A stretch of 58,916 bases of DNA from Octopus bimaculoides (lineage: Eukaryota). The stretch covers positions 37,557,092-37,616,007 of the forward strand of contig NC_069003.1 of the NCBI RefSeq assembly GCF_001194135.2, written 5' to 3'. Under the pieces are notes generated by a model. That model did not search any database, was not told the origin of the DNA, and was given only the letters and a program-made list of their open reading frames with translations. Position numbers and translations under genes: made by a program. Each line of letters begins with the position of its first letter. Position 1 is the stretch's first letter. Positions 25,599-43,076 of this stretch are shown here, piece by piece.

Positions 25599-25698
25599 NN
25601 NNNNNNNNNNNNNNNNNNNNNNNNNNNNNNNNNNNNNNNNNNNNNNNNNNNNNNNNNNNNNNNNNNNNNNNNNNNNNNNNNNNNNNNNNNNNNNNNNN
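25599..25698. other. Exactly 100-N gap, a likely unsized scaffold join
   Basis: Run length is 100, unlike the irregular or 10-N gaps elsewhere in the window. Confidence 0.6.
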
Positions 25699-26186
25699 CT
25701 CGTGGGAGAAGGAGAGCAGTACAGTGGTGGTGGTCATATATGTGAGGGATTTGGTGGGAGCCAATAATGATGATGATGATTAAACTTCTCAGTCATTTGT
25801 TAATTAGTAAACAGTTTGATATATAAACAGATACTAGACATATATATATACAGGCGAAGGCGTGGCTGTGTGGTAAGAAGGTTTCTTATCAATCACATGG
25901 TTCCAGGTAAGTGCTTTCTACTATAGCTTCAGGCTGACTAAAGCCTTATGTGGGGATCTGGTAGGCAGAAACTGAAAGAAGCCCATTATGTATATGTTTG
26001 TCCTCCTACTATCACTTGACAGCCAATGTTGGTGTGTTTACATCCCAGTGACTTAGCATTTCGACAAAAGAGGTCAATAGAATAAGTCCTGGGGGTTGAT
26101 TTGTTCAACTAAAGGAGGTGCTCCAGTATGGCCGCAGTCTAATGACTGAAACAAAGTAAAAGATGAGACTTCAAAAACATACTTAC

Positions 26187-26450
26187 CAGAGTTTCCACGG
26201 CAACATGTTCCACATCGAAGCCTGACTCTTCATGAAACCGGAATGGTAAAGTGAAGACCTTGACGGTGGAAACGAGCACCTGATTAATCAAGCATGACAG
26301 GTCCAACTTCAGCTGTAGCTGCTCCAGACCGGGAGGGGAGCCTGGTTCAGTTTCATCATGGGGCACAAGAACTGCAACAGGGAGGTTGGGTTGCTGTGGC
26401 TTGGCCTGGAGGAGGGTCGATAGTCGGATTTGAGCATCGAGCCAGTACCT
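26187..26450 (-). CDS. MCM3AP: Single GANP/MCM3AP-like exon (88 codons, phase 0-0) with no partner exons found
   Basis: Pyrimidine tract plus cattcacag acceptor and gtaagt donor. RYWLDAQIRLSTLLQAKPQQPNLPVAVLVP resembles human GANP [29 protein letters not shown] (recalled, not searched). Confidence 0.7.
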
Positions 26451-26629
26451 CTGTGAATGAGAGAAAGAGAGAAAAGTAGACACGAGTGTGTGTGTGAGAG
26501 TGTGTGTGTGTGTGTGCGTGCGTGAGAGTGTGTGTGTGTGGTTCAACTTTACAGAAAACAAATAGACAAAGACAGGTGTAGGAACAACAAGCAAGTGTAT
26601 TAGTTTGACATTTGGGAAGAATGGAAAAG

Positions 26630-28845
26630 CCGTTTATACGAAACTGCGGCAGTATGTGCGTCGCTGCTGCAATAAGTACGTACTTGCGGCTGAAACAACA
26701 AACCTGTACACGTAGGTACGAAACAATTGCGACAAAAATAAGCTCCACAACGTAAATCTGTACCCGGCGACGCAACAGCATGCCTAGCGCCGCAAAAACC
26801 TGCCCAAAGCCGCAAATACATATTCCAAGCCATAAATACTAGCCGATGCCCGTTTATACGAAACTGCGGCAGTATGTGCGTCGCTGCTGCAATGAGTACG
26901 TACTTTCGGCTGTAACAACAAACCTGAACACGTAAATACGAAACAGTGGCGACAAAATTAAGTTCCACAACTTAAATCTGTACCCGCCGACGCAGCAGCG
27001 TGCCTAGTGGCGCAAAAACGTGCCCAAAGCCGCGACTACGTATTCCAAGCCGTATAAACCATCCGATGCCCGTTTATACGAAACTGCGGCAGTATGTGCG
27101 TCGCTGCTGCAACAAGTACGTACTTGCGGCTGTAACAACAAACCTGAACACGTAAGTACGAAACAATGGCGACAAAAATAAGCTCCACAACGTAAATGTG
27201 TACCAGCCGACGCAACAGCGTGCCTAGTGGCGCAAAAACGTGCCCAAAGCCGCGACTACGTATTCCCAGCCGTAAATATCAACCAATGCCCGTTTATACG
27301 AAACTGCGGCATTACGTGCGTCGCTGCTGCAATAAGTACGTATTTGCGGTTGTAACAACAAACCTGAACACGTAAATACGAAACAATTGCGACAAAATTA
27401 AGCTCCACAACGTAAATCTGTACCCGCCGACGCAACAGCATGCCTAGTAGCGCAAAAACGTGCCCAAAGCCGCGACTACGTATTCCAAGGCGTATATACC
27501 AGCCGATGCCCGTTTATACGAAACTGCGGCATTATGTGCGTCGCTGCTGCTATAAGTACGTACTTTCGGCTGAAACAACAAACCTGAACACGTAAGTACG
27601 AAACAATTGCGACAAAAATAAGCTCCACAGCGTAAATGTGTACCAGCCGACGCAACAGCGTGCCTAGCGCCGCAAAAACGTGCCCAAAGCCGCGACTATG
27701 TATTCCAAGCCGTAAATTCCAGCCGATGCCCGTTTATACGAAACTGCGGCATTATGTGCGTCGCTGTAGCTGTAAGTACGTATCTGCGGCTGAAACAACA
27801 AACCTGAACTCGTAAGTACGAAACGATGGCGACAAAAATAAGCTCCACAACGTAAATCTGTACCCGGCGACGCAACAACGTTCCTAGTGGCGCAAAAATA
27901 TGCCCAAAGCCGGAAATACCTATTCCAAGCCATAAATACTTGGCGATGCCCGTTTATACGAAACTGCGCAGTATGTGCGTCGCTGCTGCTATAAATACGT
28001 ACTTGCGGCTGTAACAACAAACCTCAACACGTAAATAGGAAAACGTGCCGACAAAATTAAGCTCCACATAGTAAATTTGTACCCGGCGACACAACAACGT
28101 GCCTAGTGGCGCAAAAGCGTGCCCAAAGCCTCGACTACGTATTCCAATCCGTAAATACCTGCCGATGCCCGTTTATACGAAACTGCTGCAGTATGTGCGT
28201 CGCTGCTGCTATAAGTATGTACTTGCGGCTGTAACAACAAACCTGAACATCTAAATACGAAACAGTGGCAAGAAAATTAAGCACTACAACGTAAATCTGT
28301 ACCCGCCGACGCAACAGCGTGCCTAGAGGCGCAAAAATGTGCCCAAAGCCGCGACTACGTATTCCAGGCCGTAAATACCAGCCGATGCCTGTTTATACGA
28401 AACTGCGCAGTATGTGCATCGCTGCTGCTATAAGTACGTACTTGCGGCTGTAACAACAAACCTGAACACGTAAATACAAAGACGTTGCGACAAAATTAAG
28501 CTCCACAACGTAGATCTGTACCCTCCGACGGAACAGCGTGCCTAGTGGCGCAAAAACGTGCCCAAACACGCGACTAGGTATTCCAAGCCATAAATACCAG
28601 CCGGTGCATGTTTATACGAAACTGCGGCATTATGTGCGTTGCTGCTTCTATAAGTACGTACTTGCGGTTCTAACAACGAACCTGAACACTTAAATACTAA
28701 ACAGTGGCGACAAAATTAGGCTCCACAACTTAAATCTGTATTGCCGTCGCAACAGCGTGCCTAGTGGCGCAAAAACGTGCCTAAAGACGCGTATTCCAAG
28801 CCGTAAATACCAGCCGATGCCCGTTTATACGAAATTGCGGCAGTA
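26630..28845. repeat. 220-bp tandem satellite, about 10 copies (11 x 20-bp higher-order repeat)
   Basis: gtttatacgaaa anchors at 26632, 26852, 27072, 27292, 27512, 27732, 27952, 28171, 28391, 28610 and 28823. Confidence 0.95.
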
Positions 28846-31800
28846 TATTCATACGTACGTACGTATATACGTACGTACGTTCGTTCGTTCGTTCGTTCTT
28901 TTCTTCGTTCGTTTCGTTCGTTTGCTCATTCGTACATACGTACGTTCGTTTGTTCGTTCGTGTGTACGTACCTTCGTTCGTTCGTTCGTTCGTACGTACG
29001 TACGTATGTGCGTACATTCCGTCGTTCGTTCGTTCCTCTCTTACGTATGTACGTACGTACGTACGTTCGTTCATTCGTTCGTTCTAACCTACGAACGTAC
29101 GTACGTTTGTTCGTTCGTTCCTTCGTTCTTACGTACGTACTTTCGTTCGTTCGTTCGTGCGTGCGTTCGTTTGTTCGTTTTTACGTACGTACTACGTACT
29201 TACATACGTTCGTTCGTTCGTTCGTACGTACGTACGTTCGTTCGTTCATCCGTTCGTTTCACTCGTTCGTTTGTTCCTCCTTCCGGACGTACTTACATCT
29301 ATACTTTCATTTGTTTGTTCGTTCATTCTTTCCTTCGTTCGTACGTACTTTCGTTCGTTCGATCATTCCTTCGTTCGATCGTTCCTTCCTTCGGACGTAC
29401 GTACATTCGTCCATTCGTTCTTTCGTGTGGTCATTAGTTCGTCGTTCGTACGTTCTTACGTACGTACGTATTTACTTTCGTTCGTTCGATCGTTCGTCCG
29501 TTTATACGTACGTAAGTTCTTTCGTTCGTTCGTATAAACGGACGAACGATCGAACGAACGAAAGTAAATACGTACGTACGTAAGAACGTACGAACGAGCG
29601 AACGAACGAAAGAATAAACGAACGAACGTTCGTACGTACGTATGTAACTACGAACGAACGAACGAATGAACGAATGTACGTACATACGATGTTCTTTCGT
29701 TCGCTCATTCTTTCGTTCGTTCGTTCGTTCTTACCTACGTTCATGCGGTCGTTCTTACGTACGTATGTAGGTACGTACTTGCGTTCGTTCGTTCGTTCGT
29801 ATTTTCTTTCGTTCGTTCGTTCGTTCGTTTGTTCGTTCTTTCTTTCGTTCGTGCGTACTTACTTGCGTACGTATGCACGTACTTTCATTCGTTCTATCGT
29901 TCGCTTGTTCGTTCTATCATATTTACGTTCGTACATACATTCGATCGTTTCTTCTTTCGTCGGTTCGTACGTACGTACCTGAGTTCGTTCGTTCGTAGGT
30001 ACGTGCGTACGTACATTCATTCGTTCGTACGTACGTACGTACATAACTACGTACTGATGTACATACGTACGTTCGTTCGTTTGTTCATTCCTTCTTTCCT
30101 TCGTTCGTTCGTTCGTTCATTTGTTCGTGCGTTTGTACGTACGTATGTTCGTTCGTTCACTCTTTTGTTCTTTCGTTCGTCTGTTCGGTCGTTCGTTTGT
30201 TCGTTTGTTCCTTTGTTCCTTCTTTCGTTCGTTCCATTGTTTCGTTCGTTCTTATGTACGAAATATGTACATACGTACGTTCGTTCTTTCGTACCTACCT
30301 ACGTTCGGACTTGCTGTCGTTCGTTCGTACATATGTACGTACGTTCTTTCGTTCGTTCGTTCGTTCATTCATTCTTTCGTTCGTTCGTTCATTCGTTCTT
30401 ACTTACTTCCGTACTTTCGTTCGTTCGTTTGTTCGTTCTCTCCTTCGTACGTACGTTGATTCATTTGTTTGGACGTACGTACGTTTGTACGTACGAACGT
30501 ACGTTCGACCTTTCGTTCGTTCGTTCGTTCGTTAGTTAGGTCGTTCGTTTGTACGTACGTACGTACGTTCGTTCTTTCTTTCGTTCGTTCGTTTGTACAT
30601 ACGTACATTCATTCGTTCGTACGTTCGTTAGTACGTTCGTATGTTCGTACGTACGCACGTATATACGTACGTTCGTTCGTTTTTTCGTTCCTTTGCTCAT
30701 TCGTACATACGTACGTTTGTTTGTTCGTTCGTATGTACGTACCTTAGTTCGTTCGTTCGTACGTACGGACGTATGTGCGTACATTCCGTCGTTCGTTCGT
30801 TCGTTCTTTCTTACGTATGTACGTACGTACGTATTACGTTCGTTCGTTCGTTCGTTCTAACCTGCGTACTACGAACGTACGTACATACGTATTTACGTTC
30901 GTTCGTTCCTTCATTCGTTCGTTTGTACATACGTACATTCATTCGTTCGTTCGTACGTTTGTTTGTTCGTTTTTACGTACGTACTACGAACGTACATACG
31001 TTCGTTCGTTCGTTCGTACGTCCGTCCGTCCGTTCGTTTCACTCATTCGTTCGTTCGTACGTCCGTCCGTCCGTTCGTTTCACTCATTCGTTCGTTCCTT
31101 CATCCGGACGTACGTACATTTATACGTTCATTCGTTTGTTCGTTGATTCTTTCCTTCGTTCGTACGTACTTTTGTTCGTTTGTTTGATCGTTCCTTCGTT
31201 CGATCGTTTCTTCGTTCGGACGTACGTACATTCGTTCATTCGTTCGTTCTTACGTACTTACGTGCGTTCGTACATTCGTACGTACGTACGTTCGTTCGTT
31301 CGTACGTACGCACGTTCATTCATTCATTCGTTCCTTTGTTCGTTCGTACGTACGTTCGTCATTCGTTCGTTCGTTCTTTTGTTCATTCGTTCTTTTGTTC
31401 GTTCGTTCGTTCTTTCGTTCGTTCGTTAGATCTACGTACGTACATTAGTTCGTTAGTTAGGTCGTTCGTTTGTTCGTTCGTTCGTTCATTCGTACGTACG
31501 TACGCTTTTTTCGTTAATTCTTTCGTTCGATCGTTCGTTCGTTGTTTCGTTCGTACGTTCGTTCTTTCCTTCCTATGTTCATTCTTTCGTTCGTTCGTTT
31601 GTTCGTTCATTCGTTCAATCGATCGTTCGTTCTTTCGTACGTACGTACATTCGTTCGTTAGTTTGTTCATTCGTACGTACGTTCTTTTGTTCGTCCGTAC
31701 GTACGTACCTACGTTTGTTCGTTAATTCGATTGTTCGATCGTTCGTTCGTTTGTTCGATCGTTCATTCGTTCGCACGTTCGTTCGTACGTATGTATGTAA

Positions 31801-34800
31801 TTACGTTCGTTTGTTCGTTCGTACGTACTTACGTTCTTTATTTCCTTCGTTCGTTCGATCGTTCGTTCATTCGTTCGCACGTATGTACTTACGTACGTAT
31901 GTACGTACGCTCGTTCTTTCGGTCGTTCATTCGTTCGTACGTACGTATGTACTACGTTCAAGCGTTAGTTCATTCTTTCGTTTGTCAAATTGTTCGATCG
32001 TTCGTACGTACGTACGTACGTAATTTCGTTCGTTCGTACTTTCATACGTACGTTCGTCCGTTTTTTCGTTTATTCGTTCGTCCGTTCCTTCGTTTCATTC
32101 GCTCGTTCGTTCGTTAGCACGTACGCTAATTCGTTCGTTTGTACGTACGTACGTTCGTTTGTTTGTTCGATTGTTCGTACCTACCGATGTATGTACGTAA
32201 GTTCGTTCGTCCGTTCGTTCGTACGTACGTTCGTTCGTACGTACGTTCGTACGTATGTACGTTCATTCGTTCGTTCGTACATTCGTTCCTTCGTACGTTC
32301 GTTCATTCGTACACACGTACGTACGTTCATTCACTCATTCGGTCGTTTGCTCGTTCGTTCGTTCATTCGTTCGTTTGTACTTACGTACGTTCGTTTGTTC
32401 GTTCGTTCATTCGTACGCACGTACGTACGTTTTTTCACTCATTCGTTCGTTTGCTCGCTCGTTCATTCGTTCGTACGCACGTTCGTCATTCGTACGTACG
32501 TACATTCGTTCGTTTGCTCGTACGTACGTACGTTCGTTGGTTCCTTCGTTCGGTCGGGCGTTCGTACGTACGTACGCACGTACGTCCGTTCGTTCGTTCG
32601 CTCGTTCTTTTGTTTGTTCGTTCCTTCGTTCGATCGAACGTACGTATGTACTACGTTCTATCGTTTGTTCATTCGATCGTACGTACGTATGTACTACATA
32701 TGTACTACGTTCAATCTTTATTCCGTTCGTTCGTTTTTATTCATTCGTTCGATCGTTCGGACGTACGTACGTTCGTTCGTTCTTTCGTCCGTTCGTTCGT
32801 TCTTTCGTCCGTTCGTACGTACGTACGTTGTTCGTTCGTTCGTTCGTTTGTTCGTTCTTTCTTTCGTTCGTTTGTTCGTGCGTACTTACGTACTTATGCA
32901 CATACGTTCATTTGTTCTATCGTTCGCTTGTTCGTTCTATCGTTCGCTTGTTCGTTCTATCGTACGTACGTTCGGACGTACGTTCGATCGTTTCTTCGTT
33001 CGTTGGTTCGTACGCACGTACGTGTGTTCGTTCGTTCGTTGGAAGGTACTATGTACGTACGTTCATTCGTTCGTACGCTCGTACGGTCGTTGGTAACTAC
33101 GTACGTTCGTATGTACTACGTTCAAGCGTTAGTTCATTCTTTCGTTTGTCAAATTGTTCGATCGTTCGTACGTACGTATGTAAGTTCGTTCGTTCGTACT
33201 TTCGTACGTACGTACGTTGTTCTTGCTTTCGTTCATTCGTACGTACGTTCGTTCGTTCGTTCGTTCGTTGGTACGTACGTAAGTTAGTTCGTTCGTTCGC
33301 TCGTTCTTTTGTTCGTTCGTTCTTTATTTCAATCGAACGTACGTACGTAATTACCTTCGTTCGTTCGTACGTACGTATGTCCTTCATTTCCTTCTTTTTT
33401 CGATCGTTCGTTCGTTCGTTCATACGTATGTACCTTCTTTCATTTGTACGTATGTACGTACGTTCGTTCTATCGTTCGTTCATTCAATCGTACGTACGTA
33501 TGTACTACGTTCAATCTTTATTTCGTTCGTTCGTCTGTTCATTCGTTCTATCGTTTGTACGTACGTACGTTCGTTCGTCCTTTTGTCCGTTCGTACATAC
33601 GTACGTTGTTCGTTCGTTCGTTCGTTTGTTCGTTCTTTCTTTCGTTCGTTCGTTCGTTCATGCGTACTTACTTACGTTCATTTTTTCTATCGTTCGCTTG
33701 TTCGTTTTATTGTACGTACGTTCGGACGTACGTTCGTTCATTCGTTCGTACGTACATACGTACGTACATTCATTCGTTCGTACGTACGTACGTAACTACG
33801 TACTGATGTACATACTAACGTTCGTTTGTTCATTCGTTCTTTCTTTCGTTCGTTAGTTCGTTCGTTTTACGTTCTTTCGCTTGTAGGTACGTAGTTACGT
33901 TCTTTCGTATGTAGGTATGTTCGTTCGTTACTTTGTTCGTTCGCCCATTCGTTCATTCATTTGTTTGTTCATTCGTTCGTTCGATCGTTTGTTCGTTCGT
34001 ACGTTTGTACTTACGTAAGTTCGTTCATTCGTTCGTTCTTTCGATCCTTCATTCTTTCGTTTGTTCGTTCTTTCGTTCGTTCGTATGTACGTACATTCTT
34101 TCGTTCGTCCGTTCGTACTTACATACGTACGTACGTACGTTCGTTCGTTCGTTCGTACGTCCGTTTATACGTACGTACGTTTCTTCGTTTGGTCGTTCTT
34201 TCGTTCGTTTGTTCATTCGTTCTTACGTACGTGCGTGCGTACGTACATTTGTTCGTTCGTGCGGTCGTTCTTACGTACGTATGTAGGTAGTACGTTCGTT
34301 CGTTCGTTCGTTTTTTCTTTCGTTCGTTCGTTCGTTCGTTCGTGTGTTCGTTTATCTTTCGTTCGTTCGTTCGCTCATACGTACGTACGTACTTACGTTC
34401 GTTTATTCGTTCGTATGTACGTACTTTCGTTCCTTCGTTCGCTCCTTCGTTCGTTCGTACGAACGTATGTGCGTATATTCCGTCGTTCGTTCGTTCGTTC
34501 TTTCTTTGTTACGTACGTACATTCGTTTGTTTGCTCGTTTGTTTGTTCTGTCGTCTGTACGTACGTACATACGTACGTACGTTCGTTCATTCGCTCATTC
34601 TTACCTACGTACTACGAACGTACGTACGTTTGTTCGTTCGTACATACGCACATACGTACGTACGTACAGACGTACATTCGTGTCGTTCGTTCGTACGTAC
34701 GTTCGTTCGTTTGTACGTGCGTACGTTCGTTTCTACATACGTACGTTCGTTCGTTCATTTCGCTCGTTCGTTTGCCCTTTCGCACCTTCGTTCTTTTGTT

Positions 34801-37800
34801 TGTTATTTCGTTCGCTCATTCGTACTTTCGTTTGTTTGTTCGTTCCTTCCTTCCTCCAGATGTACGTACGTAATAACGTTCATTCTTTTTTTCGTTCATT
34901 TGTTCGTTCGTTCGTACGTACTTACGTCCGTTCTTTCGTTCTGACGTACGTACGTTCGTTGGATATTTCGTACCTACTTACATACGTACGTACGTACGTT
35001 CGTTCATTCATTCGTTCGTTAGTTCGTTCTTTCGTTCGTTAGTTTGTTCGATCGTTCGTTCGTACCTAGTACGTACAGACGTTCGTACTTTCGTTCGTTC
35101 GTTCATTCGTTCGTTCGTTCTTACGTACGTATTTCGTTCGTTCATTCGTACGTACGTACGTACCTTCGTTCGTTCGTTTTTTCTTACGTACGTTCGTTCG
35201 TTCATTCATTCGTTCGTACGTACGTCCGTTCGTTTGGTCAGTCGTTTGTTCGGTCGTTCGTACCTATGTACGGCGGGAAGTTATGTTCGTTCGTTCGATC
35301 GTTCATCCGTTCGTACATACGTAAGTTCGTTCGTTCGTTTGTACGTGCATGCGTTCGTTCGTTCGTATGTACGTACGTACCTTAATTTGTTCGTTAGATT
35401 GTTTGTTCGCGCGTTCGATCTTTCATTCGTTTATTTCGCTCGTTCGGTCGTTCGGTCGTTCGTTCGTTCTTATGTACGTACGTTCGTTCTTTCGTTCGTT
35501 CGTTCTTTCGTACGTTCGTTCTTTCGTTCGTTCATTCGTTCGTTCGTAGGCACATACGTACATATGTACGTTCTTTTGTTAGTTCTTTCGTTCGATTGTT
35601 CTTTCCTTCGTACGTTCATTCGTTCGTTCGGACGTACGNNNNNNNNNNNNNNNNNNNNNNNNNNNNNNNNNNNNNNNNNNNNNNNNNNNNNNNNNNNNNN
35701 NNNNNNNNNNNNNNNNNNNNNNNNNNNNNNNNNNNNNNNNNNNNNNNNNNNNNNNNNNNNNNNNNNNNNNNNNNNNNNNNNNNNNNNNNNNNNNNNNNNN
35801 NNNNNNNNNNNNNNNNNNNNNNNNNNNNNNNNNNNNNNNNNNNNNNNNNNNNNNNNNNNNNNNNNNNNNNNNNNNNNNNNNNNNNNNNNNNNNNNNNNNN
35901 NNNNNNNNNNNNNNNNNNNNNNNNNNNNNNNNNNNNNNNNNNNNNNNNNNNNNNNNNNNNNNNNNNNTAGTACGTTCGTTCAATATTTCGTGCCTACGTA
36001 CATACGTATGTACGTTTGTTTGTTCGTTCGTTCATTCGTTCGACATTTCGTTCGTTCGTTCGTTTGTTAGGTCGTTCGTTTGTACGTACGTACGTTCTTT
36101 CGTTCGTACGTTCGTTCGTTCGTTCTTTCGCTCGTTCATTCGTACGTATGTACGTACGTACATAGGTTCGTTCGTTCGTTCATTCGTTTGTTCGTTCGCT
36201 CCTTCGTACGTACGTTCGTTCGTTCGTTCTTATGTACTTACCTTCGTTCGTTCGTACGTACGGACGGACGGACGTACTACGAACGTACGTACTTTCGTTC
36301 GTTCGTACGTAAGTTCGTTCGTTCGTGTCGCTCGTTCGTTCGTTCGTTTTTACGAACGTACGTGCGTTCTTACATTCGTACGTACGTACGTACGTGAGGT
36401 CGTTCTTCCGGTCGTACGATTGTAATTACCTACGTTCGTTCTTTCGTTCGTTCGTTCGTTCGTTCTTACGTACCTACATACGTTCTTTCGTTCGTTCCGT
36501 CGTTCTTTCGATGGCTCGTTCGTTCGTTCGTACGTACGTGCACACGTACGTACGTACGTTCGTTTATTCGTTCGATCTTTCTTTCGTACGTACGTAGGAA
36601 CGACCGAACGAACGTACGTACAACTGGAAGAACGAACCAACGAACGAACGAAAGATCGAACGAACATACGTAAGAACGAACGAACGAACGAATAAAAGAA
36701 CGAACGAACATACGTAAGAACGAACGAACGAACGAATAAAAGAACGAACGAACGNNNNNNNNNNNNNNNNNNNNNNNNNNNNNNNNNNNNNNNNNNNNNN
36801 NNNNNNNNNNNNNNNNNNNNNNNNNNNNNNNNNNNNNNNNNNNNNNNNNNNNNNNNNNNNNNNNNNNNNNNNNNNNNNNNNNNNNNNNNNNNNNNNNNNN
36901 NNNNNNNNNNNNNNNNNNNNNNNNNNNNNNNNNNNNNNNNNNNNNNNNNNNNNNNNNNNNNNNNNNNNNNNNNNNNNNNNNNNNNNNNNNNNNNNNNNNN
37001 NNNNNNNNNNNNNNNNNNNNNNNNNNNNNNNNNNNNNNNNNNNNNNNNNNNNNNNNNNNNNNNNNNNNNNNNNNNNNNNNNNNNNNNNNNNNNNNNNNNN
37101 NNNNNNNNNNNNNNNNNNNNNNNNNNNNNNNNNNNNNNNNNNNNNNNNNNNNNNNNNNNNNNNNNNNNNNNNNNNNNNNNNNNNNNNNNNNNNNNNNNNN
37201 NNNNNNNNNNNNNNNNNNNNNNNNNNNNNNNNNNNNNNNNNNNNNNNNNNNNNNNNNNNNNNNNNNNNNNNNNNNNNNNNNNNNNNNNNNNNNNNNNNNN
37301 NNNNNNNNNNNNNNNNNNNNNNNNNNNNNNNNNNNNNNNNNNNNNNNNNNNNNNNNNNNNNNNNNNNNNNNNNNNNNNNNNNNNNNNNNNNNNNNNNNNN
37401 NNNNNNNNNNNNNNNNNNNNNNNNNNNNNNNNNNNNNNNNNNNNNNNTTTCGATGGCTCGTTCGTTCGTTCGTACGTACGTGCACACGTACGTACGTACG
37501 TTCGTTTATTCGTTCGATCTTTCTTTCGTACGTACGTAGGAACGACCGAACGAACGTACGTACAACTGGAAGAACGAACCAACGAACGAACGAAAGATCG
37601 AACGAACATACGTAAGAACGAACGAACGAACGAATAAAAGAACGAACGAACATACGTAAGAACGAACGAACGAACGAATAAAAGAACGAACGAACGTATG
37701 AACAAAAGAACGATTGAACGAACGAACGTACAATCGAAAGTACGTACGTACATACGTACGTACGAACGAAGGAACGTACGAACGTACGAACGAACGGACG

Positions 37801-40800
37801 AACGTGCGTACGTAAGTAGGTAGGAAATAACGAAAGAACGTACGAATGTACGTAAGAACGAACGAACGAACGAACAAACGAATAAACGTACTACGTAATT
37901 ACGACGGAACGAACGTACGTACGAAGGAACGAACGAACGTACATACGTATTACGTAGGCAGGAAAGAACGAAAGAAAGTACGTATGAACGAACGAACGTA
38001 CGTACATTCGAACGAACAAAAAACGAATAAACGTACGTACGTACTTACGACCGAACGAAGGTTCGTAGGAAGGAAAGAACGAACAAACGTACGAATGAAG
38101 GAACGAACGTACTTACGTTCGTACGTACGGACGAACGAATGAATTTACGTACGTACGTACGTATGAACGATCGAACGAACGTACGTACGTATGTACGAAC
38201 TAATGAAAGGACGAAAGTACGTACGTAAGTACGAACGATTCAACGAACGAACGAACGTACGCAATTAAGAAATAACGAAAGAACGTACGTACGTACGAAC
38301 AAACGAACGTACAAACGAACGAACGTACGACCGAACGAACGTACGTATGAACGAACGAACGAACGTACGTACGAACGAATGAACGTAAATATATACATAC
38401 GTACGTACGAACGAAAGAACTTTCGTACGTACGTACGTACGTATGAACGATCGAACGAACGTACGTATGCAGGTAAGAAATAAAGAAAGAACGTAAGTAG
38501 GTACGAACAAACGTACGTACGTAGGCAGGAAATAACGAAAGAAGTACGAACGAAAGTACGTATTACGTAGGGAGGAATTAACGGTAGATCGTACGTACGT
38601 ACGAACGAAGAAACGAAAGAACGTACGTACGTACGTGAGTACGAACGAACAATCGAACAAACGTACGTATTACGTAGGCAGGAAATAACGAAAGAACGTA
38701 CGTACGAACGAACGTAAGTATGAACAAACGAATTAAGGAACGATGGTACGTACGTACGTACGTAAGAATGAACGAAAGAACGAGCGAACGAAAGAACGAA
38801 CGAACTTGCGTATGTACGTTGTTACTTTCGTACGAACAAACGAACGAACGAGCGTACATACGTACGTACGAACGACCGAACGAACGTACGTACGAATGGA
38901 CGAACGAATTGACGAACGAACGAAAAAATGAAAGATCGAACGAACATACGAACGAACGAACAAACGAACGAACGTACGAACGAAAGAACGATTGAACGAA
39001 CGAACGTACAATCGAACGAACGTACAATCGAACGTACGTACGTATATACGTACGTACGAACGAACGAAGGAACAAACGAACGTACGAACGATTGAACGTG
39101 CGTACGTACCTAGGAAATAACGAAAGAACGTACGAGCGAAAGAACGAATGAATGAACGTACGAACGAACGAATGAACGATCGAACAAACATACGAACGAA
39201 CGGAACGAACAAACGAATAAACGTACGTGCGTAATTACGATGAACGAACGAACATACGTACGTAGGAATGAACGAACGAATGAACGTACGTATTACGTAG
39301 GCAGGAAATAACGAAATAACGTACGTACCTAAGAACGAACGTACGTACGTAAAAACGAACGAGCGTACGTATGAACGAACAAACGTGCATACGTACAAAC
39401 AAACGAACGAACGTACGTGCGAAGGAGGGAAAGAACAAACGTACATACGTACGTATAAACGACCGAACGAACGCACGTACGTAAGTACGAACGAATGTAC
39501 ATATATACGTACGTTGGTACGAACGAACGTACGTAGGAACGAAGGTACGAACGAATGAACGTACGTACGAACGCACAATTGAACGAATTAATGATCAAAC
39601 GTACTTACGTAAATAAGAACGACCGAATTAACGAACGATCGTACGTACGTACGTACGAATGAACGAAAGAACGTACGAACGTACGTACGTACGTGCTAAC
39701 GAACGAACAAACGAACGTATGTACGTACAAAAGAACAATCGAACGAATTAAAGAACGAACGTACTTACGAAAGTACGAACGAACGAATTAACGAACGATC
39801 ATACGTACGTACGAATGAGCGAAAGAACGAACGAACGAACGTACGTACATAAGTAGTTACGGTCGTACGAACGAAAGACCACACGTGCGTACAAACGGAC
39901 GAACGTACAAACGGACGAACGTACGATCGAAAGAACGATTGAACGAACGAACGTACAATCGAACGTACGTACGTACATACGTGCATAGTACGTACGAACG
40001 AACGAACGTACGTACGTACGAATAGACGACCGAACTAACGAACGAACGAAAAAACAAACGATCGAACGAACATACGTACGAAAGAACGATTGAACGAACG
40101 AACGTACAATCGAACGTACGTACGAACGAACGAAGGAACAAACGAACGTACGAACGAACGATCGAACGTTTGTACGAACGTACGTAGGAAATAACGAAAG
40201 AACGTATGAACGAACGAATGAATGAACGAACGTACGAACGAACGAATGAACAAACATTCGTACGTACATAAGAATGAAGGAACGAACAAAAGAATAAACG
40301 TACGTACGTAATTACGACCGAATGCACGAACGAAGGAACGAACAAACGTATGTACGTATTACGTAGGCACGAAATAACGAAAGAACGTACGTACGTACGA
40401 ACGTACAAACGTACGTACGAACGGACGAACGTACGTATGATCGAACGAACGTACGTACGTACGAAGAAACAAACAAACGAATAAACGTACGTACATACTT
40501 ACGAACGAACGTACGAACGAACGTACGAACGAAGGAATGAACGAACAAACGAACATACGTACGTACGTAAGAAAGGACGATCGAACGAACGAAGGAATAA
40601 ACGTACGTACGTAATTACGACCGAACGAACGAACGTACGTACGAAGGAACGAACGAACGAACGTACGTATTACGTAGGCAGGAAATAACGAAAGAACGTA
40701 CGTACCTAAGAACGAACGTACGTACGTAAAAACGAACGAACGTATGTATGAACAAACAAACGTGCGTACGAACAAACGAACGAACGTACGTACGAAGGAA

Positions 40801-41468
40801 AGAACGGACATACGAACGTACGTACGTACGAACAAACGAACGTTCTTACGTACGTACGGACGGACGAACGAACGAACGAACGTACGTAGGAACGAACGTA
40901 CAAACATACGTACAAACATACGTGTGTACGTACGTTCGTACCAACAAACGAACGAACGAACGTACATACGTACGTAGGAACGACCGAACGAACGTACGTA
41001 CGAATGGACGAACAAACGAATGAACGTACGAACGAAAGAACGATTGAACGAACGAACGTACGTACGTACGTACGTACATACGTATGTACGAACGAAGGAA
41101 CAAACGAACGTATGAACGAGTGGACGTGCGTACGCACGTAGGTAGGAAATAACGAAAGAACGTACGAGCGAAAGAACGAATGAATGAACGAACGTACGAA
41201 CGAAGGAATGAACGAACAAACATACGTACGTAAGTACGAACGAACTAACGAATGAACTTACGTACGTACGAACTAAATATCGTACGTACGTAATTACGTA
41301 TGTACGATCGAACGAACGAACGAACGAACGTACGTACGTAAGTACGTAGGAACGAACGAACGAACGAAAGAACGAACGTAGGAACGTACGTTCGTACGAA
41401 CAAAATAACGAACGAACGTACTTACATACGTACGCACGAACGACCGAACGAACGAACGAACGAACGTA
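28846..41468. repeat. Irregular 4-bp-period TTCG/TACG satellite, about 12.6 kb including gaps, in two opposite orientations
   Basis: TTCG-rich up to ~36590 and CGAA-rich from there to ~41468, with a local inversion at 29531-29685. Confidence 0.95.
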
Positions 41469-42655
41469 CGTTCTTGCACATTGTTGCGGCAAAAGGTACA
41501 TTCTTCGCCGGGCACGTATGTACAGGCCGTATGTACGAGCCGTATGTACGGGCCTGGGGCCGTAAGTACGTGCTCGGCGCCGCAAGAAAGTGCCCGGTAC
41601 TCCAAGAACGTGCCCGGCGCTGCAACAACCTGGCCAGCACCACAAGAACGTGCCTGGATCCACAAGAACGTGCCTGGGGCCGCAAGAACATGCCTGGAAA
41701 TGTAAAAACGTGTCTGGCCCCGCAAGAACATGCTTTGGGCCGCAAGTATGTGCCTGTCTCCGCAAGAACCTGCCCATGGCTGCAACAATGTTCGTGGGCC
41801 GCAAGAACGTAGCTGGTTCTGCAAGAACGTGCCCAGGGCATAACTACGTTCCCGGGGCCGTTACTACGTGCCTGGAGCAGTAACTACGTGCCTGTGGCCG
41901 CAAGTACGCTTCCGGGGCCGTAAATACGTGCCCGGCGCTGCAATAACGTTCCCATCGCCGCAAGAACGTTCCCGGCACCACAAGAACACACCCGGAGCTT
42001 CAAGAATGTACCCGGTACCGCAAGAACGGGCCCGGCGCCGCAAGAACGTGCCTGGCGCCGCAAGAACATGTCCGGCGTCTCAAAAACGTGGCTCAAGTCA
42101 AAACTACGTGCCTGTGGCCGCAAGTACGTGCCTAGGGCCACAGGAACGTGCCTAGGGCCACAGGAACGTGCCTGGGGCCGTAAATATGTGACCGGGGCTG
42201 GAAGTACGTTCCTGGTGCCGTGAGTACGTGCCAGGCNNNNNNNNNNNNNNNNNNNNNNNNNNNNNNNNNNNNNNNNNNNNNNNNNNNNNNNNNNNNNNNN
42301 NNNNNNNNNNNNNNNNNNNNNNNNNNNNNNNNNNNNNNNNNNNNNNNNNNNNNNNNNNNNNNNNNNNNNNNNNNNNNNNNNNNNNNNNNNNNNNNNNNNN
42401 NNNNNNNNNNNNNNNNNNNNNNNNNNNNNNNNNNNNNNNNNNNNNNNNNNNNNNNNNNNNNNNNNNNNNNNNNNNNNNNNNNNNNNNNNNNNNNNNNNNN
42501 NNNNNNNNNNNNNNNNNNNNNNNNNNNNNNNNNNNNNNNNNNNNNNNNNNNNNNNNNNNNNNNNNNNNNNNNNNNNNNNNNNNNNNNNNNNNNNNNNNNN
42601 NNNNNNNNNNNNNNNNNNNNNNAAGATGCCTGGGTCCACAAGAACGTGCCTGGTG
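41468..42655. repeat. 20-bp minisatellite (consensus gcaagaacgtgcctggggcc), degenerate
   Basis: gcaag(a/t)acgtgcc recurs at ~20-bp spacing on both sides of the 42237-42622 gap. Confidence 0.92.
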
Positions 42656-42661
42656 CTTTCT

Positions 42662-43076
42662 TGCAGAAAAAAGTCCAATTGTCCTTTATTAGGATTTTGT
42701 TGCACCTGTAAACGTAGTGTACAGATGTATCATTAGTACTAGAACAGAGAATTATATTTATATAGGATGTAGTATTAACGTGAAACAGAGAATATATAAC
42801 CGTAGGTCCTCGTTTAGACTTAGACATAAGGCAAATAGTACGACATTGGCAAGTAAAATTTGGGAGTTAAAAGATAATGGTATTAATTTTAGCCTTAAAT
42901 GGGAAATTATAAGAAAAGCTCAACCTTATAGAAATAGTAGATATGGATGTGAATTATGTTCTATGGAAATATATGAAATTTTTAAACTTAGAAATAATCC
43001 TAATCTAACCAATAATAGATTAGACCTTAGGGTATCATGTGTACATTGCTCTACTCGCACTTTTAAATTTTTTTAA
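42662..43076 (+). mobile_element. Penelope-like GIY-YIG endonuclease domain, 5'-truncated and frameshifted (Naiad-like Cys pattern)
   Basis: CRKKSNCPLLGFC / NVVYRC...YIG...KQRIYN..SSFR...TLASKIWELK...WEII.KA..Y...CELCSME...NNR.DL...C.H, stop at 43074-43076. Confidence 0.88.

What the first reader, a model, noticed from the sequence alone, without database searches (positions are those of the whole stretch)
28846..41520. Giant inverted architecture pivoting on self-complementary (TACG)n runs
The left arm reads 20-mer repeats then TTCG array (to ~36590). The right arm is the mirror image: CGAA array then reverse-oriented 20-mers at 41468-41515. The switch falls in tacgtacgta (36587-36596). Because (TACG)n is its own reverse complement, a nascent strand can fold back or switch template there without losing register, giving a built-in inversion mechanism. 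The result is a multi-kb quasi-palindrome with modular repeat arms. It is reminiscent of Foldback-type elements or fold-back/breakage-fusion scars, and it could form cruciform DNA or long dsRNA. I know of no description of this satellite system, but I cannot search to confirm novelty.
Basis: partly seen in the sequence, partly recalled or inferred. Interest (0 to 1): 0.72.

Follow-up and report, generated by a model that had tools for sequence, protein, structure and literature searches.

The report
Head-to-head tetranucleotide satellite blocks, draft assembly
Two blocks of one degenerate TTCG/TACG satellite meet in opposite orientations inside a 16-kb repeat island of a cephalopod draft genome; this arrangement is already known from other satellites, the blocks are not a sequence palindrome, and the centre is partly a scaffolding artefact.

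Summary
The orientation switch is in the sequence. TTCG:CGAA is 621:26 at 28870-36584 and 8:331 in the right arm (36597-36754 plus 37539-41470), and the change falls at CGTACGTACGTA (36585-36596).

The larger reading does not hold up:
- **Gap artefact.** The 249 bases before gap 36755-37447 are identical to the 249 bases after it. This is an unmerged contig overlap, so the pivot is written twice.
- **No palindrome.** Inverted identity between the arms is about 71% on every antidiagonal, the same as direct identity within an arm. The pivot flanks are no more palindromic than random arm pairs.
- **Flanks not mirrored.** The 220-bp satellite on the left and the 20-mer array on the right are one family, both on the + strand.
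- **TACG is not a special pivot.** It is the second commonest unit: 214 runs, 18.5% of array bases, median spacing 31 bp. Thirty-five perfect palindromes of 16-28 bp carry no switch inside the array.
- **Not a Foldback element.** Its defining features are not met.

One true fold-back signature exists: exact 67-bp inverted arms at 29442-29508 and 29531-29597.

The island lies upstream of an MCM3AP/GANP-like exon, probably in its intron, in an octopod-like genome. The closest known kind is a satellite array with inversely oriented subarrays ("macro-dyad symmetry"). Interest is low.

The parts
26630..28846 (+). 220-bp satellite, 10.1 copies at about 88% identity. Each unit is a higher-order repeat of 11 diverged 20-mers. 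It forms the left flank of the tetranucleotide block.
   Evidence: TRF; self-BLAST; 20-mer profile hits at phases 10/30/.../190, 45 on + and 0 on -; 22-mer anchor found 9 times on +.
28853..28880 (.). 28-bp perfect palindrome ACGTACGTACGTAT|ATACGTACGTACGT at the boundary between the 220-bp satellite and the array. It is the longest palindrome in the block.
28870..36584 (+). Left arm: degenerate compound satellite (TTCG)n(TACG)m with about 70% matches. TTCG:TACG units are 341:205, CpG is about 16 per 100 bp, and the longest pure TTCG run is 6 units. It contains gap 1.
29442..29597 (.). Exact hairpin: 67-bp arms 29442-29508 and 29531-29597 with a 22-bp spacer TACGTAAGTTCTTTCGTTCGTT. This is the only sequence-level fold-back signature. 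The next-longest exact inverted match anywhere in the block is 36 bp.
29531..29690 (-). 160-bp island of CGAA orientation inside the TTCG arm (CGAA 15, TTCG 1). Its first 67 bp are the right hairpin arm. The switches are at 29533/29542 (no TACG run) and 29666/29696 (contains gtacgtac).
35639..35967 (.). Assembly gap 1 (329 N). The same TTCG orientation lies on both sides, with no dovetail. Continuity is unknown.
36506..36754 (+). End of a 787-bp contig (35968-36754). These 249 bp are exactly repeated at 37448-37696 and contain the pivot.
36585..36596 (.). Pivot cgtacgtacgta, where TTCG orientation changes to CGAA orientation. The longest perfect palindrome here is 10 bp. The pivot is written a second time at 37527-37538.
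36755..37447 (.). Assembly gap 2 (693 N), flanked by a 249-bp exact dovetail. It is a spurious gap from an unmerged contig overlap. About 942 bp of scaffold (gap plus one copy) should probably collapse.
37448..37696 (+). Second copy of the 249-bp block at the start of the 4.8-kb right-hand contig. The pivot lies only 80 bp from this contig's start.
37539..41470 (-). Right arm: the same compound satellite in the opposite orientation, reading (CGAA)n(CGTA)m on +. It is richer in TACG than the left arm, with TTCG:TACG units 197:161.
41468..41547 (.). Transition zone: about 50 bp with weak minus-strand resemblance to the 20-mer (best hit 9.8 bits), followed by 3.5 copies of a 13-bp repeat CGGGCCGTATGTA.
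41548..42655 (+). 20-mer satellite with consensus near ACGTGCCTGGGGCCGCAAGA, in + orientation and of the same family as the subunits of the 220-bp satellite. It is interrupted by gap 3 (42237-42622) and continues for 2 units after it.
26187..26450 (-). Context: an internal exon of an MCM3AP/GANP-like gene. On the minus strand it has a polypyrimidine tract plus CAG acceptor and a CTG|GTAAGT donor. The satellite island starts 180 bp upstream of the acceptor, which places it in the upstream intron.
   Evidence: Pfam PF16769, E 6.7e-10, 38.3 bits against a cut-off of 25, profile positions 211-307; splice sites read directly.

Best explanation
This is a roughly 16-kb composite satellite island (26630-42655) in an octopod-like cephalopod genome. 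It most likely sits in the intron upstream of an MCM3AP/GANP-like exon on the minus strand.

**Anatomy.** A 20-mer repeat family forms both outer flanks in the same orientation: a 220-bp higher-order repeat on the left and plain 20-mers on the right. Between them lies a CpG-rich, degenerate compound tetranucleotide satellite, (TTCG)n(TACG)m. It is split into two subarrays of opposite orientation, about 7.7 kb and about 3.9 kb, which abut head to head.

**Origin (inferred).** The subarrays share motif and composition but no collinear sequence. The orientation change is therefore best read as one old inversion, or an inverted insertion, inside a tandem array. Slippage and unequal exchange would since have turned both sides over independently.

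**Function (inferred).** The structure has no dedicated function and is selfish or neutral satellite DNA. Its only predictable consequence is that the single-stranded DNA or intronic RNA can form a long mismatched hairpin.

**The pivot.** The TACG run at the pivot is incidental, because TACG is a co-dominant unit of the array.

**The centre.** The doubled pivot and the 693-N gap are a scaffolding artefact from overlapping contig ends.

**A separate small event.** An exact 67-bp hairpin (29442-29597) shows that small inverted duplications do occur in this array, or in its sequencing.
For: - Motif polarity.
- Equal identity of about 71% on every direct and inverted diagonal.
- Pivot flanks not palindromic, z 0.5-1.5; ungapped 11-20%.
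- Flanks are one family on the same strand: 45 plus and 0 minus profile hits, and BLAST plus-strand hits to unit positions 122-186.
- The arms differ in composition, TTCG:TACG 341:205 against 197:161.
- TACG runs are ubiquitous and nearly always without a switch.
- 249-bp exact dovetail across gap 2, with similar dovetails at other gaps.
- Hairpin energy is the same for artificial joins.
- GANP exon with canonical splice sites 180 bp from the island.
- Cephalopod origin: an MFS exon is 83% identical to an Argonauta hians protein.
- Satellite arrays built of two inversely oriented multi-kb subarrays are documented elsewhere. In Tribolium freemani the median array is 11.8 kb and 71.8% of arrays have two inverted subarrays (bioRxiv 10.1101/2024.12.02.626372).
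Against: - The junction is attested only by one 249-bp stretch at the ends of two contigs of a gap-rich short-read-style scaffold, so the inversion could still be a contig-level chimera.
- No second copy of this satellite system could be retrieved from any collection, so neither recurrence nor age could be checked.
- "Old inversion" is inferred only from the lack of mirror identity. Rapid array turnover could erase a younger event.
- No upstream GANP exon was found at 42.7-58.9 kb, so the intronic placement rests on one exon and its splice sites.
Confidence: 0.6

Rival explanations
1. The orientation switch is an assembly artefact. A chimeric read or path joined two array fragments of opposite strand at a short TACG microhomology. 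The real locus would then be a single-orientation array, or two separate loci.
For: - The pivot lies 80 bp from the start of one contig and 158 bp from the end of a 787-bp contig.
- The only support is the shared 249 bp.
- The scaffold has 15 gaps in 59 kb, nearly all at repeats, several with unmerged dovetails.
- The gap-size estimate of +693 conflicts with a true overlap of 249 bp.
Against: - The self-complementary stretch at the pivot is only 10-12 bp. That is too short to make a de Bruijn graph switch strands at normal k, so reads containing the junction must exist.
- Two contigs agree on it base for base.
- The 4.8-kb right contig runs uninterrupted from the pivot through 3.9 kb of CGAA into +-oriented 20-mers that match the left flank's orientation. 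A consistent local layout therefore requires the switch.
- The arrays are degenerate enough to assemble: the longest internal exact repeat is 71 bp.
Confidence: 0.25
2. Self-complementary (TACG)n runs act as built-in pivots where a nascent strand folds back or switches template. That would recurrently create inverted subarrays and a quasi-palindrome.
For: - Both the main pivot (36585-36596) and the array's left boundary (28853-28880) are TACG palindromes.
- The R-to-F switch at 29666/29696 contains gtacgtac.
- The exact 67-bp hairpin has its right arm starting with CGTA, complementary to the TACG ending the left arm, and a TACGTACGTA run straddles the arm/spacer border. This is compatible with self-priming through a TACG unit.
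Against: - There is no mirror-order identity at the main pivot.
- Only 2 of 214 TACG runs coincide with a switch, and the chance expectation of a nearby run is 50-70%.
- The longest palindromes inside the array (16-26 bp, 34 of them) have no switch.
- The F-to-R switch at 29533/29542 has no TACG run.
- The hairpin's symmetry centre (29519.5) is 10 bp away from the TACG palindrome centre (29509.5).
- There are only 3 independent switches.
- 65 metagenome loci with (TTCG)3(TACG)2 showed no switch within 60 bp.
Confidence: 0.1
3. The structure is a Foldback-type transposon (like FB, Galileo or Tetris) whose long terminal inverted repeats are built of tandem subrepeats.
For: - The arms are made of modular tandem repeats in inverted orientation.
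- Foldback elements with satellite-bearing inverted termini are known: Tetris (PMC4079207), Galileo (PMC3573991) and Rehavkus in Tribolium.
Against: - The arms are not more similar to each other than to themselves.
- No unique mirrored termini and no target-site duplication were seen at 28846/41475 or at 26630/42655 (read).
- The arms meet without a loop or coding middle.
- The outer flanks are the same satellite in direct orientation.
- Arm lengths are 7.7 kb against 3.9 kb.
Confidence: 0.03

Closest known systems
Satellite arrays composed of inversely oriented subarrays ("macro-dyad symmetry"), e.g. TfSat01/TfSat03 of Tribolium freemani (bioRxiv 10.1101/2024.12.02.626372). Strand switches and inversions inside human centromeric satellite arrays are a related case (bioRxiv 10.1101/2021.07.12.452052).
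   Same: - One continuous array of about 10-15 kb of a single satellite family.
- It is split into two multi-kb blocks of opposite orientation that meet at a short inversion segment.
- A second satellite lies alongside.
- A single strand across the junction has the potential to form a hairpin.
   Different: - The unit here is a 4-bp compound microsatellite rather than a monomer of 100-170 bp.
- Only a single locus is seen, so recurrence and conservation of the inversion point are unknown.
- The location is probably intronic rather than shown to be centromeric.
- The sequence comes from a draft assembly with gaps.
Foldback transposons (Drosophila FB, Galileo, Tetris)
   Same: Inverted arms built of tandem subrepeats of several periods.
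   Different: - No arm-to-arm identity, no mirrored termini and no target-site duplication.
- No loop or transposase region.
- The flanks are direct repeats of the same satellite.
Fold-back inversions and inverted duplications from template switching or breakage-fusion-bridge cycles; quasi-palindrome-templated mutation
   Same: The small exact hairpin at 29442-29597 (67-bp arms, 22-bp spacer) has exactly this signature.
   Different: The 12-kb architecture does not. There is no mirror-order identity around the main pivot.
Self-complementary, alternating pyrimidine-purine microsatellites, such as (TA)n, palindromic AT-rich repeats and (CG)n. They can adopt hairpin, cruciform or Z-form structures and are fragile. 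This comparison rests on my own knowledge, not on a test here.
   Same: (TACG)n is its own reverse complement and alternates pyrimidine and purine.
   Different: The runs here are short, at most 5 units or 20 bp. Within this window they are not associated with rearrangement.
Unmerged overlapping contig ends flanking N gaps in short-read scaffolds. This is a known scaffolding and gap-closing artefact (my own knowledge).
   Same: An exact 249-bp suffix equals the prefix across gap 2. Smaller dovetails occur at other gaps in repeats.
   Different: This explains only the doubled pivot, not the orientation switch itself.

Membership tests
Satellite array with inversely oriented subarrays (macro-dyad symmetry) | One continuous array of a single repeat family | tested here: met
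   The same compound TTCG/TACG unit set, GC content (0.43) and CpG density are found in both blocks. TRF period 4 holds throughout.
Satellite array with inversely oriented subarrays (macro-dyad symmetry) | Two or more multi-kb subarrays of opposite orientation | tested here: met
   TTCG:CGAA is 621:26 on the left and 8:331 on the right.
Satellite array with inversely oriented subarrays (macro-dyad symmetry) | Recurrent at many loci, with conserved inversion segments | not testable with these tools
   No other copy of this satellite was found. The satellite ORF gave no protein hits. Metagenome and viral DNA scans returned only short unrelated microsatellites. The genome of origin is not in the collections.
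Foldback-type transposon | Long terminal inverted repeats that are sequence-similar to each other | tested here: not met
   Inverted identity of 71% equals the within-arm background, and no preferred antidiagonal exists.
Foldback-type transposon | Mirrored outer termini and a flanking target-site duplication | tested here: not met
   The outer ends share only the generic ACGTACG(TTCG)4 motif. No duplication was seen at 28846/41475 or 26630/42655 (read). The flanks are one satellite in direct orientation.
Foldback-type transposon | Multiple dispersed copies, or an autonomous partner with a transposase | not testable with these tools
   The source genome is not available.
Fold-back inversion or inverted-duplication scar | Near-identical arms in mirror order starting at the junction | tested here: not met
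   Main pivot: z is 0.5-1.5 against random arm pairs. The feature is met only by the small hairpin at 29442-29597.
Fold-back inversion or inverted-duplication scar | Microhomology or a short palindrome at the junction | tested here: inconclusive
   A 10-bp palindrome lies at the pivot. Such runs cover 18.5% of the array, so this is expected by chance.
Scaffolding artefact (unmerged contig overlap) | The sequence before the gap is exactly repeated after the gap, edge to edge | tested here: met
   36506-36754 equals 37448-37696, 249 of 249 bases.

The most novel reading that the evidence does not exclude
In this cephalopod, short self-complementary (TACG)n runs inside a CpG-rich compound tetranucleotide satellite would act as recurrent self-priming or template-switch sites. 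The exact 67-bp hairpin with a CGTA/TACG junction would be a fresh event and the 12-kb head-to-head arrangement an old one. Because the island sits in a GANP/MCM3AP intron, it would be transcribed into a multi-kb imperfect hairpin RNA that could feed small-RNA pathways.
Probability: 0.07. Interest if true: 0.5.

Novelty: new member of a known kind. Interest (0 to 1): 0.18.

Why it matters
It matters little beyond assembly quality control and repeat annotation.

- **Assembly.** A 693-N gap flanked by 249 identical bases should be collapsed. A striking "giant palindrome" read by eye from motif polarity is not a sequence palindrome.
- **Repeat annotation.** The 20-mer/220-bp family and the TTCG/TACG compound satellite may be undescribed cephalopod repeats. 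No cephalopod satellite survey turned up in the held library.
- **If confirmed by long reads.** The locus would add a microsatellite-scale example to the known phenomenon of satellite arrays with inverted subarrays. It would also be a possible source of intronic hairpin RNA.

Tried and rejected
- **Rfam scan of the whole window:** no family matched.
- **Protein search with a 220-bp-satellite ORF, to fish out other copies:** no hits.
- **Protein search with a 533-aa ORF through the TTCG arm:** five weak hits. I fetched the loci for four of them, a sea anemone and metagenome contigs. They hold TTCG tracts of about 1 kb or less, some in both orientations, but no TACG-compound multi-kb array.
- **Orthologous MFS locus in Argonauta hians (long-read assembly), +-10 kb:** no TTCG/CGAA array.
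- **DNA scans for (TTCG)3(TACG)2-3:** 0 viral contigs. The 65 metagenome contigs all carry microsatellites of tens of bp, and none switches orientation within 60 bp.
- **Profile search of 1.84 billion representatives with the GANP exon, to get a full-length relative for exon mapping:** only 2 weak low-complexity hits.
- **Pfam on 10 open minus-strand frames at 48-58 kb:** no further GANP exons.
- **Literature searches for cephalopod satellites or AACG/TTCG repeats:** nothing relevant.
- **A de Bruijn strand-switch artefact at a palindromic k-mer:** rejected, because the palindrome is only 10 bp.
- **A single simple inversion that also carried 20-mers:** rejected. It would place the reversed 20-mers next to the pivot, not at the outer end.
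Full report
**What the window is**

The window is eukaryotic draft scaffold sequence: GC is about 36%, microsatellites are very frequent, and there are 15 N gaps in 59 kb. An MFS-transporter exon at 21069-21554 (+) is 83% identical to a protein of the octopod Argonauta hians. The source is therefore a cephalopod, probably an octopod. Rfam finds nothing.

**Anatomy of the region**

- 26630-28846: a 220-bp satellite, 10.1 copies at about 88% identity. Each unit is made of 11 diverged 20-mers.
- 28853-28880: a 28-bp perfect TACG/TATA palindrome.
- 28870-36584: a degenerate compound satellite (TTCG)n(TACG)m on the + strand. TTCG 621, CGAA 26.
- 36585-36596: the pivot, cgtacgtacgta.
- 36597-41470: the same satellite in the opposite orientation. 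TTCG 8, CGAA 331.
- 41468-41547: a short transition zone.
- 41548-42655: a 20-mer satellite.

Three gaps lie inside: 35639-35967, 36755-37447 and 42237-42622.

The array is not a TTCG array with occasional TACG. TTCG and TACG are co-dominant units, 341:205 on the left and 197:161 on the right. Pure runs never exceed 6 and 5 units. CpG density is about 16 per 100 bp.

**The gaps, tested first as the scan's program asked**

- The 249 bases before gap 2 (36506-36754) are identical, base for base and edge to edge, to the 249 bases after it (37448-37696). This is an unmerged overlap of two contigs. The 693 N are spurious and the pivot is written twice, at 36585-36596 and 37527-37538.
- After collapsing, the arms measure about 7.7 kb and 3.9 kb.
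- Smaller dovetails occur at other gaps that sit in repeats: 54 bp at 19803-19812 and 33 bp at 4987-4996. This is a habit of this assembly.
- Gap 1 has TTCG orientation on both sides and no overlap. Nothing more can be said about it.
- The pivot lies 80 bp from the start of the right contig and 158 bp from the end of a 787-bp contig. All the evidence for the junction is that shared 249-bp stretch.

**Is it a palindrome? No.**

- Self-BLAST gives inverted alignments between the arms at 71% identity on every antidiagonal. That equals the 71-73% of direct alignments within each arm, and no diagonal centred on the pivot stands out.
- Reading outward from the pivot, ungapped identity is 11-20%.
- Semi-global alignment of the pivot flanks scores z = 0.5, 0.8 and 1.5 for 100, 200 and 400 bp against 300 random left/right arm pairs.
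- The longest exact inverted match between the arms is 36 bp.

The mirror is one of motif polarity only.

**Are the modules mirrored? Mostly not.**

- A 20-mer profile built from the right flank hits the 220-bp satellite 45 times on + and never on - at 8 bits or more.
- BLAST aligns the right flank to unit positions 122-186 on the plus strand. The two large flanks are therefore one family in direct orientation.
The neighbouring CGAA arm yields five such minus-strand hits (>=8 bits) in 3.7 kb. Support is weak.

**Is the pivot special? No.**

- TACG-type runs of at least 8 bp number 214, cover 18.5% of array bases and have a median spacing of 31 bp. A random position lies within 10 bp of one 51% of the time and within 20 bp 71% of the time.
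- There are only three independent orientation switches: 29533/29542 (no TACG run), 29666/29696 (gtacgtac) and the main pivot.
- The pivot's run is 12 bp against a mean of 10, and its longest palindrome is 10 bp.
- Thirty-five perfect palindromes of 16-28 bp exist in the array. Apart from the one at the array boundary, none marks a switch.

**The one true fold-back signature**

Positions 29442-29508 and 29531-29597 are exact reverse complements, 67 bp each, separated by 22 bp. This is far beyond anything else in the block. They open a 160-bp CGAA island in the TTCG arm.

The right arm begins with CGTA, which is complementary to the TACG that ends the left arm. That is compatible with self-priming through a TACG unit. 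It is a single case, and the hairpin's centre (29519.5) is not the TACG palindrome's centre (29509.5). It may be a recent template switch or a library artefact.

**Hairpin potential**

Folded as RNA, the pivot +-200 nt gives -191 kcal/mol, with 132 of 150 pairs spanning the pivot. Single-orientation controls give about -109. Artificial head-to-head joins of unrelated arm pieces give -188 on average. Any orientation switch in this satellite confers the same potential, so it says nothing about origin.

**Context**

- On the minus strand, 26187-26450 is a textbook internal exon, with a polypyrimidine tract plus CAG acceptor and a CTG|GTAAGT donor. Its product matches Pfam MCM3AP_GANP: E 6.7e-10, above the curated cut-off, profile positions 211-307.
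- The island starts 180 bp upstream of the acceptor, so it most likely fills the upstream intron and is transcribed. This is an inference: no upstream exon was found at 48-58 kb.
- Just right of the island, 42717-43076 (+) has a weak GIY-YIG match, as at the 3' end of Penelope-like retroelements.

**Search for relatives**

- Nothing comparable was retrieved. The satellite ORF has no protein hits.
- The A. hians orthologous locus has no such array.
- Viral contigs gave 0 hits.
- 65 metagenome contigs carry only short (TTCG)(TACG) microsatellites without nearby switches.
- Translations of the arm hit TTCG tracts of about 1 kb or less in a sea anemone and in metagenome contigs, without the TACG compound structure.

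**Best explanation (confidence 0.6)**

This is a composite satellite island in which one compound tetranucleotide satellite exists as two inversely oriented subarrays between direct-oriented flanks of a 20-mer family. The switch is best read as one old inversion or inverted insertion inside the array. Independent slippage and unequal-exchange turnover has since erased any collinearity and shifted composition. No function is implied, and the doubled centre is a scaffolding artefact.

Shown: the polarity, the lack of palindromy, the direct flanks, the dovetail and the ubiquity of TACG. Inferred: the age, the inversion origin and the intronic location.

**Rivals**

- Contig-level chimera at the pivot: 0.25.
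- Foldback transposon: 0.03.

**Comparison with what is known**

- The closest known kind is satellite arrays made of inversely oriented multi-kb subarrays ("macro-dyad symmetry"). In Tribolium freemani the median array is 11.8 kb and 71.8% of arrays have two inverted subarrays (bioRxiv 10.1101/2024.12.02.626372). Strand switches within human centromeric arrays are a related case (bioRxiv 10.1101/2021.07.12.452052).
- Two defining features are met here. Recurrence cannot be tested.
- Foldback elements with satellite-bearing termini are known (Tetris PMC4079207, Galileo PMC3573991), but their defining features (arm identity, mirrored ends, target-site duplication) were tested and not met.

**Verdict**

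This is a new member of a known kind, with an assembly artefact at its centre, and interest is low.

Noticed in passing
window 26187-26450 (-): Internal exon of an MCM3AP/GANP-like gene (Pfam PF16769, E 6.7e-10) with canonical acceptor and donor sites. The satellite island begins 180 bp upstream of its acceptor.
   Followed up: partly
window 21069-21554 (+): Open frame with an MFS_1 transporter match. It is 83% identical to an Argonauta hians hypothetical protein and 73% identical to two Logan-assembly proteins. This is the only clue to the organism, a cephalopod.
   Followed up: yes
window 42717-43076 (+): Open frame with a weak GIY-YIG endonuclease match (E 0.015), immediately after the end of the 20-mer array. 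It looks like the 3' end of a Penelope-like retroelement.
   Followed up: no
window 25860-26130: A stretch that resembles the abundant tRNA-derived SINE of octopus genomes. This is recalled from memory only and was not tested.
   Followed up: no
window gaps 19803-19812, 4987-4996, 3890-4635, 6668-7136: Other N gaps are also flanked by exact dovetail duplications (54, 33, 25 and 25 bp) inside tandem repeats. Nearly all 15 gaps sit at microsatellites, so unmerged overlaps are systematic in this assembly.
   Followed up: partly
window 41509-41554: 3.5 copies of a 13-bp repeat CGGGCCGTATGTA between the CGAA arm and the 20-mer array. It looks like a truncated derivative of the 20-mer.
   Followed up: no
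window 28870-41470: The tetranucleotide block carries about 16 CpG per 100 bp at only 43% GC, and CpG-decay variants (TTTG, TTCA) are only modestly represented. This may mean the array is unmethylated or rapidly homogenised.
   Followed up: partly
window 19720-19899 and 11901-12017: Two further minisatellites, 32 bp x 5.6 copies and 18 bp x 6.5 copies. They were not compared with the 20-mer family or with the TTCG/TACG satellite.
   Followed up: no
L068 (Actinostola sp., GCA_033675265.1) 18001-19000, 23001-24000, 25001-26500: A sea-anemone locus has TTCG tracts of about 1 kb in both orientations a few kb apart, inside a gene model annotated with UTP20_C. Kilobase-scale (TTCG)n arrays are therefore not unique to this cephalopod.
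   Followed up: partly
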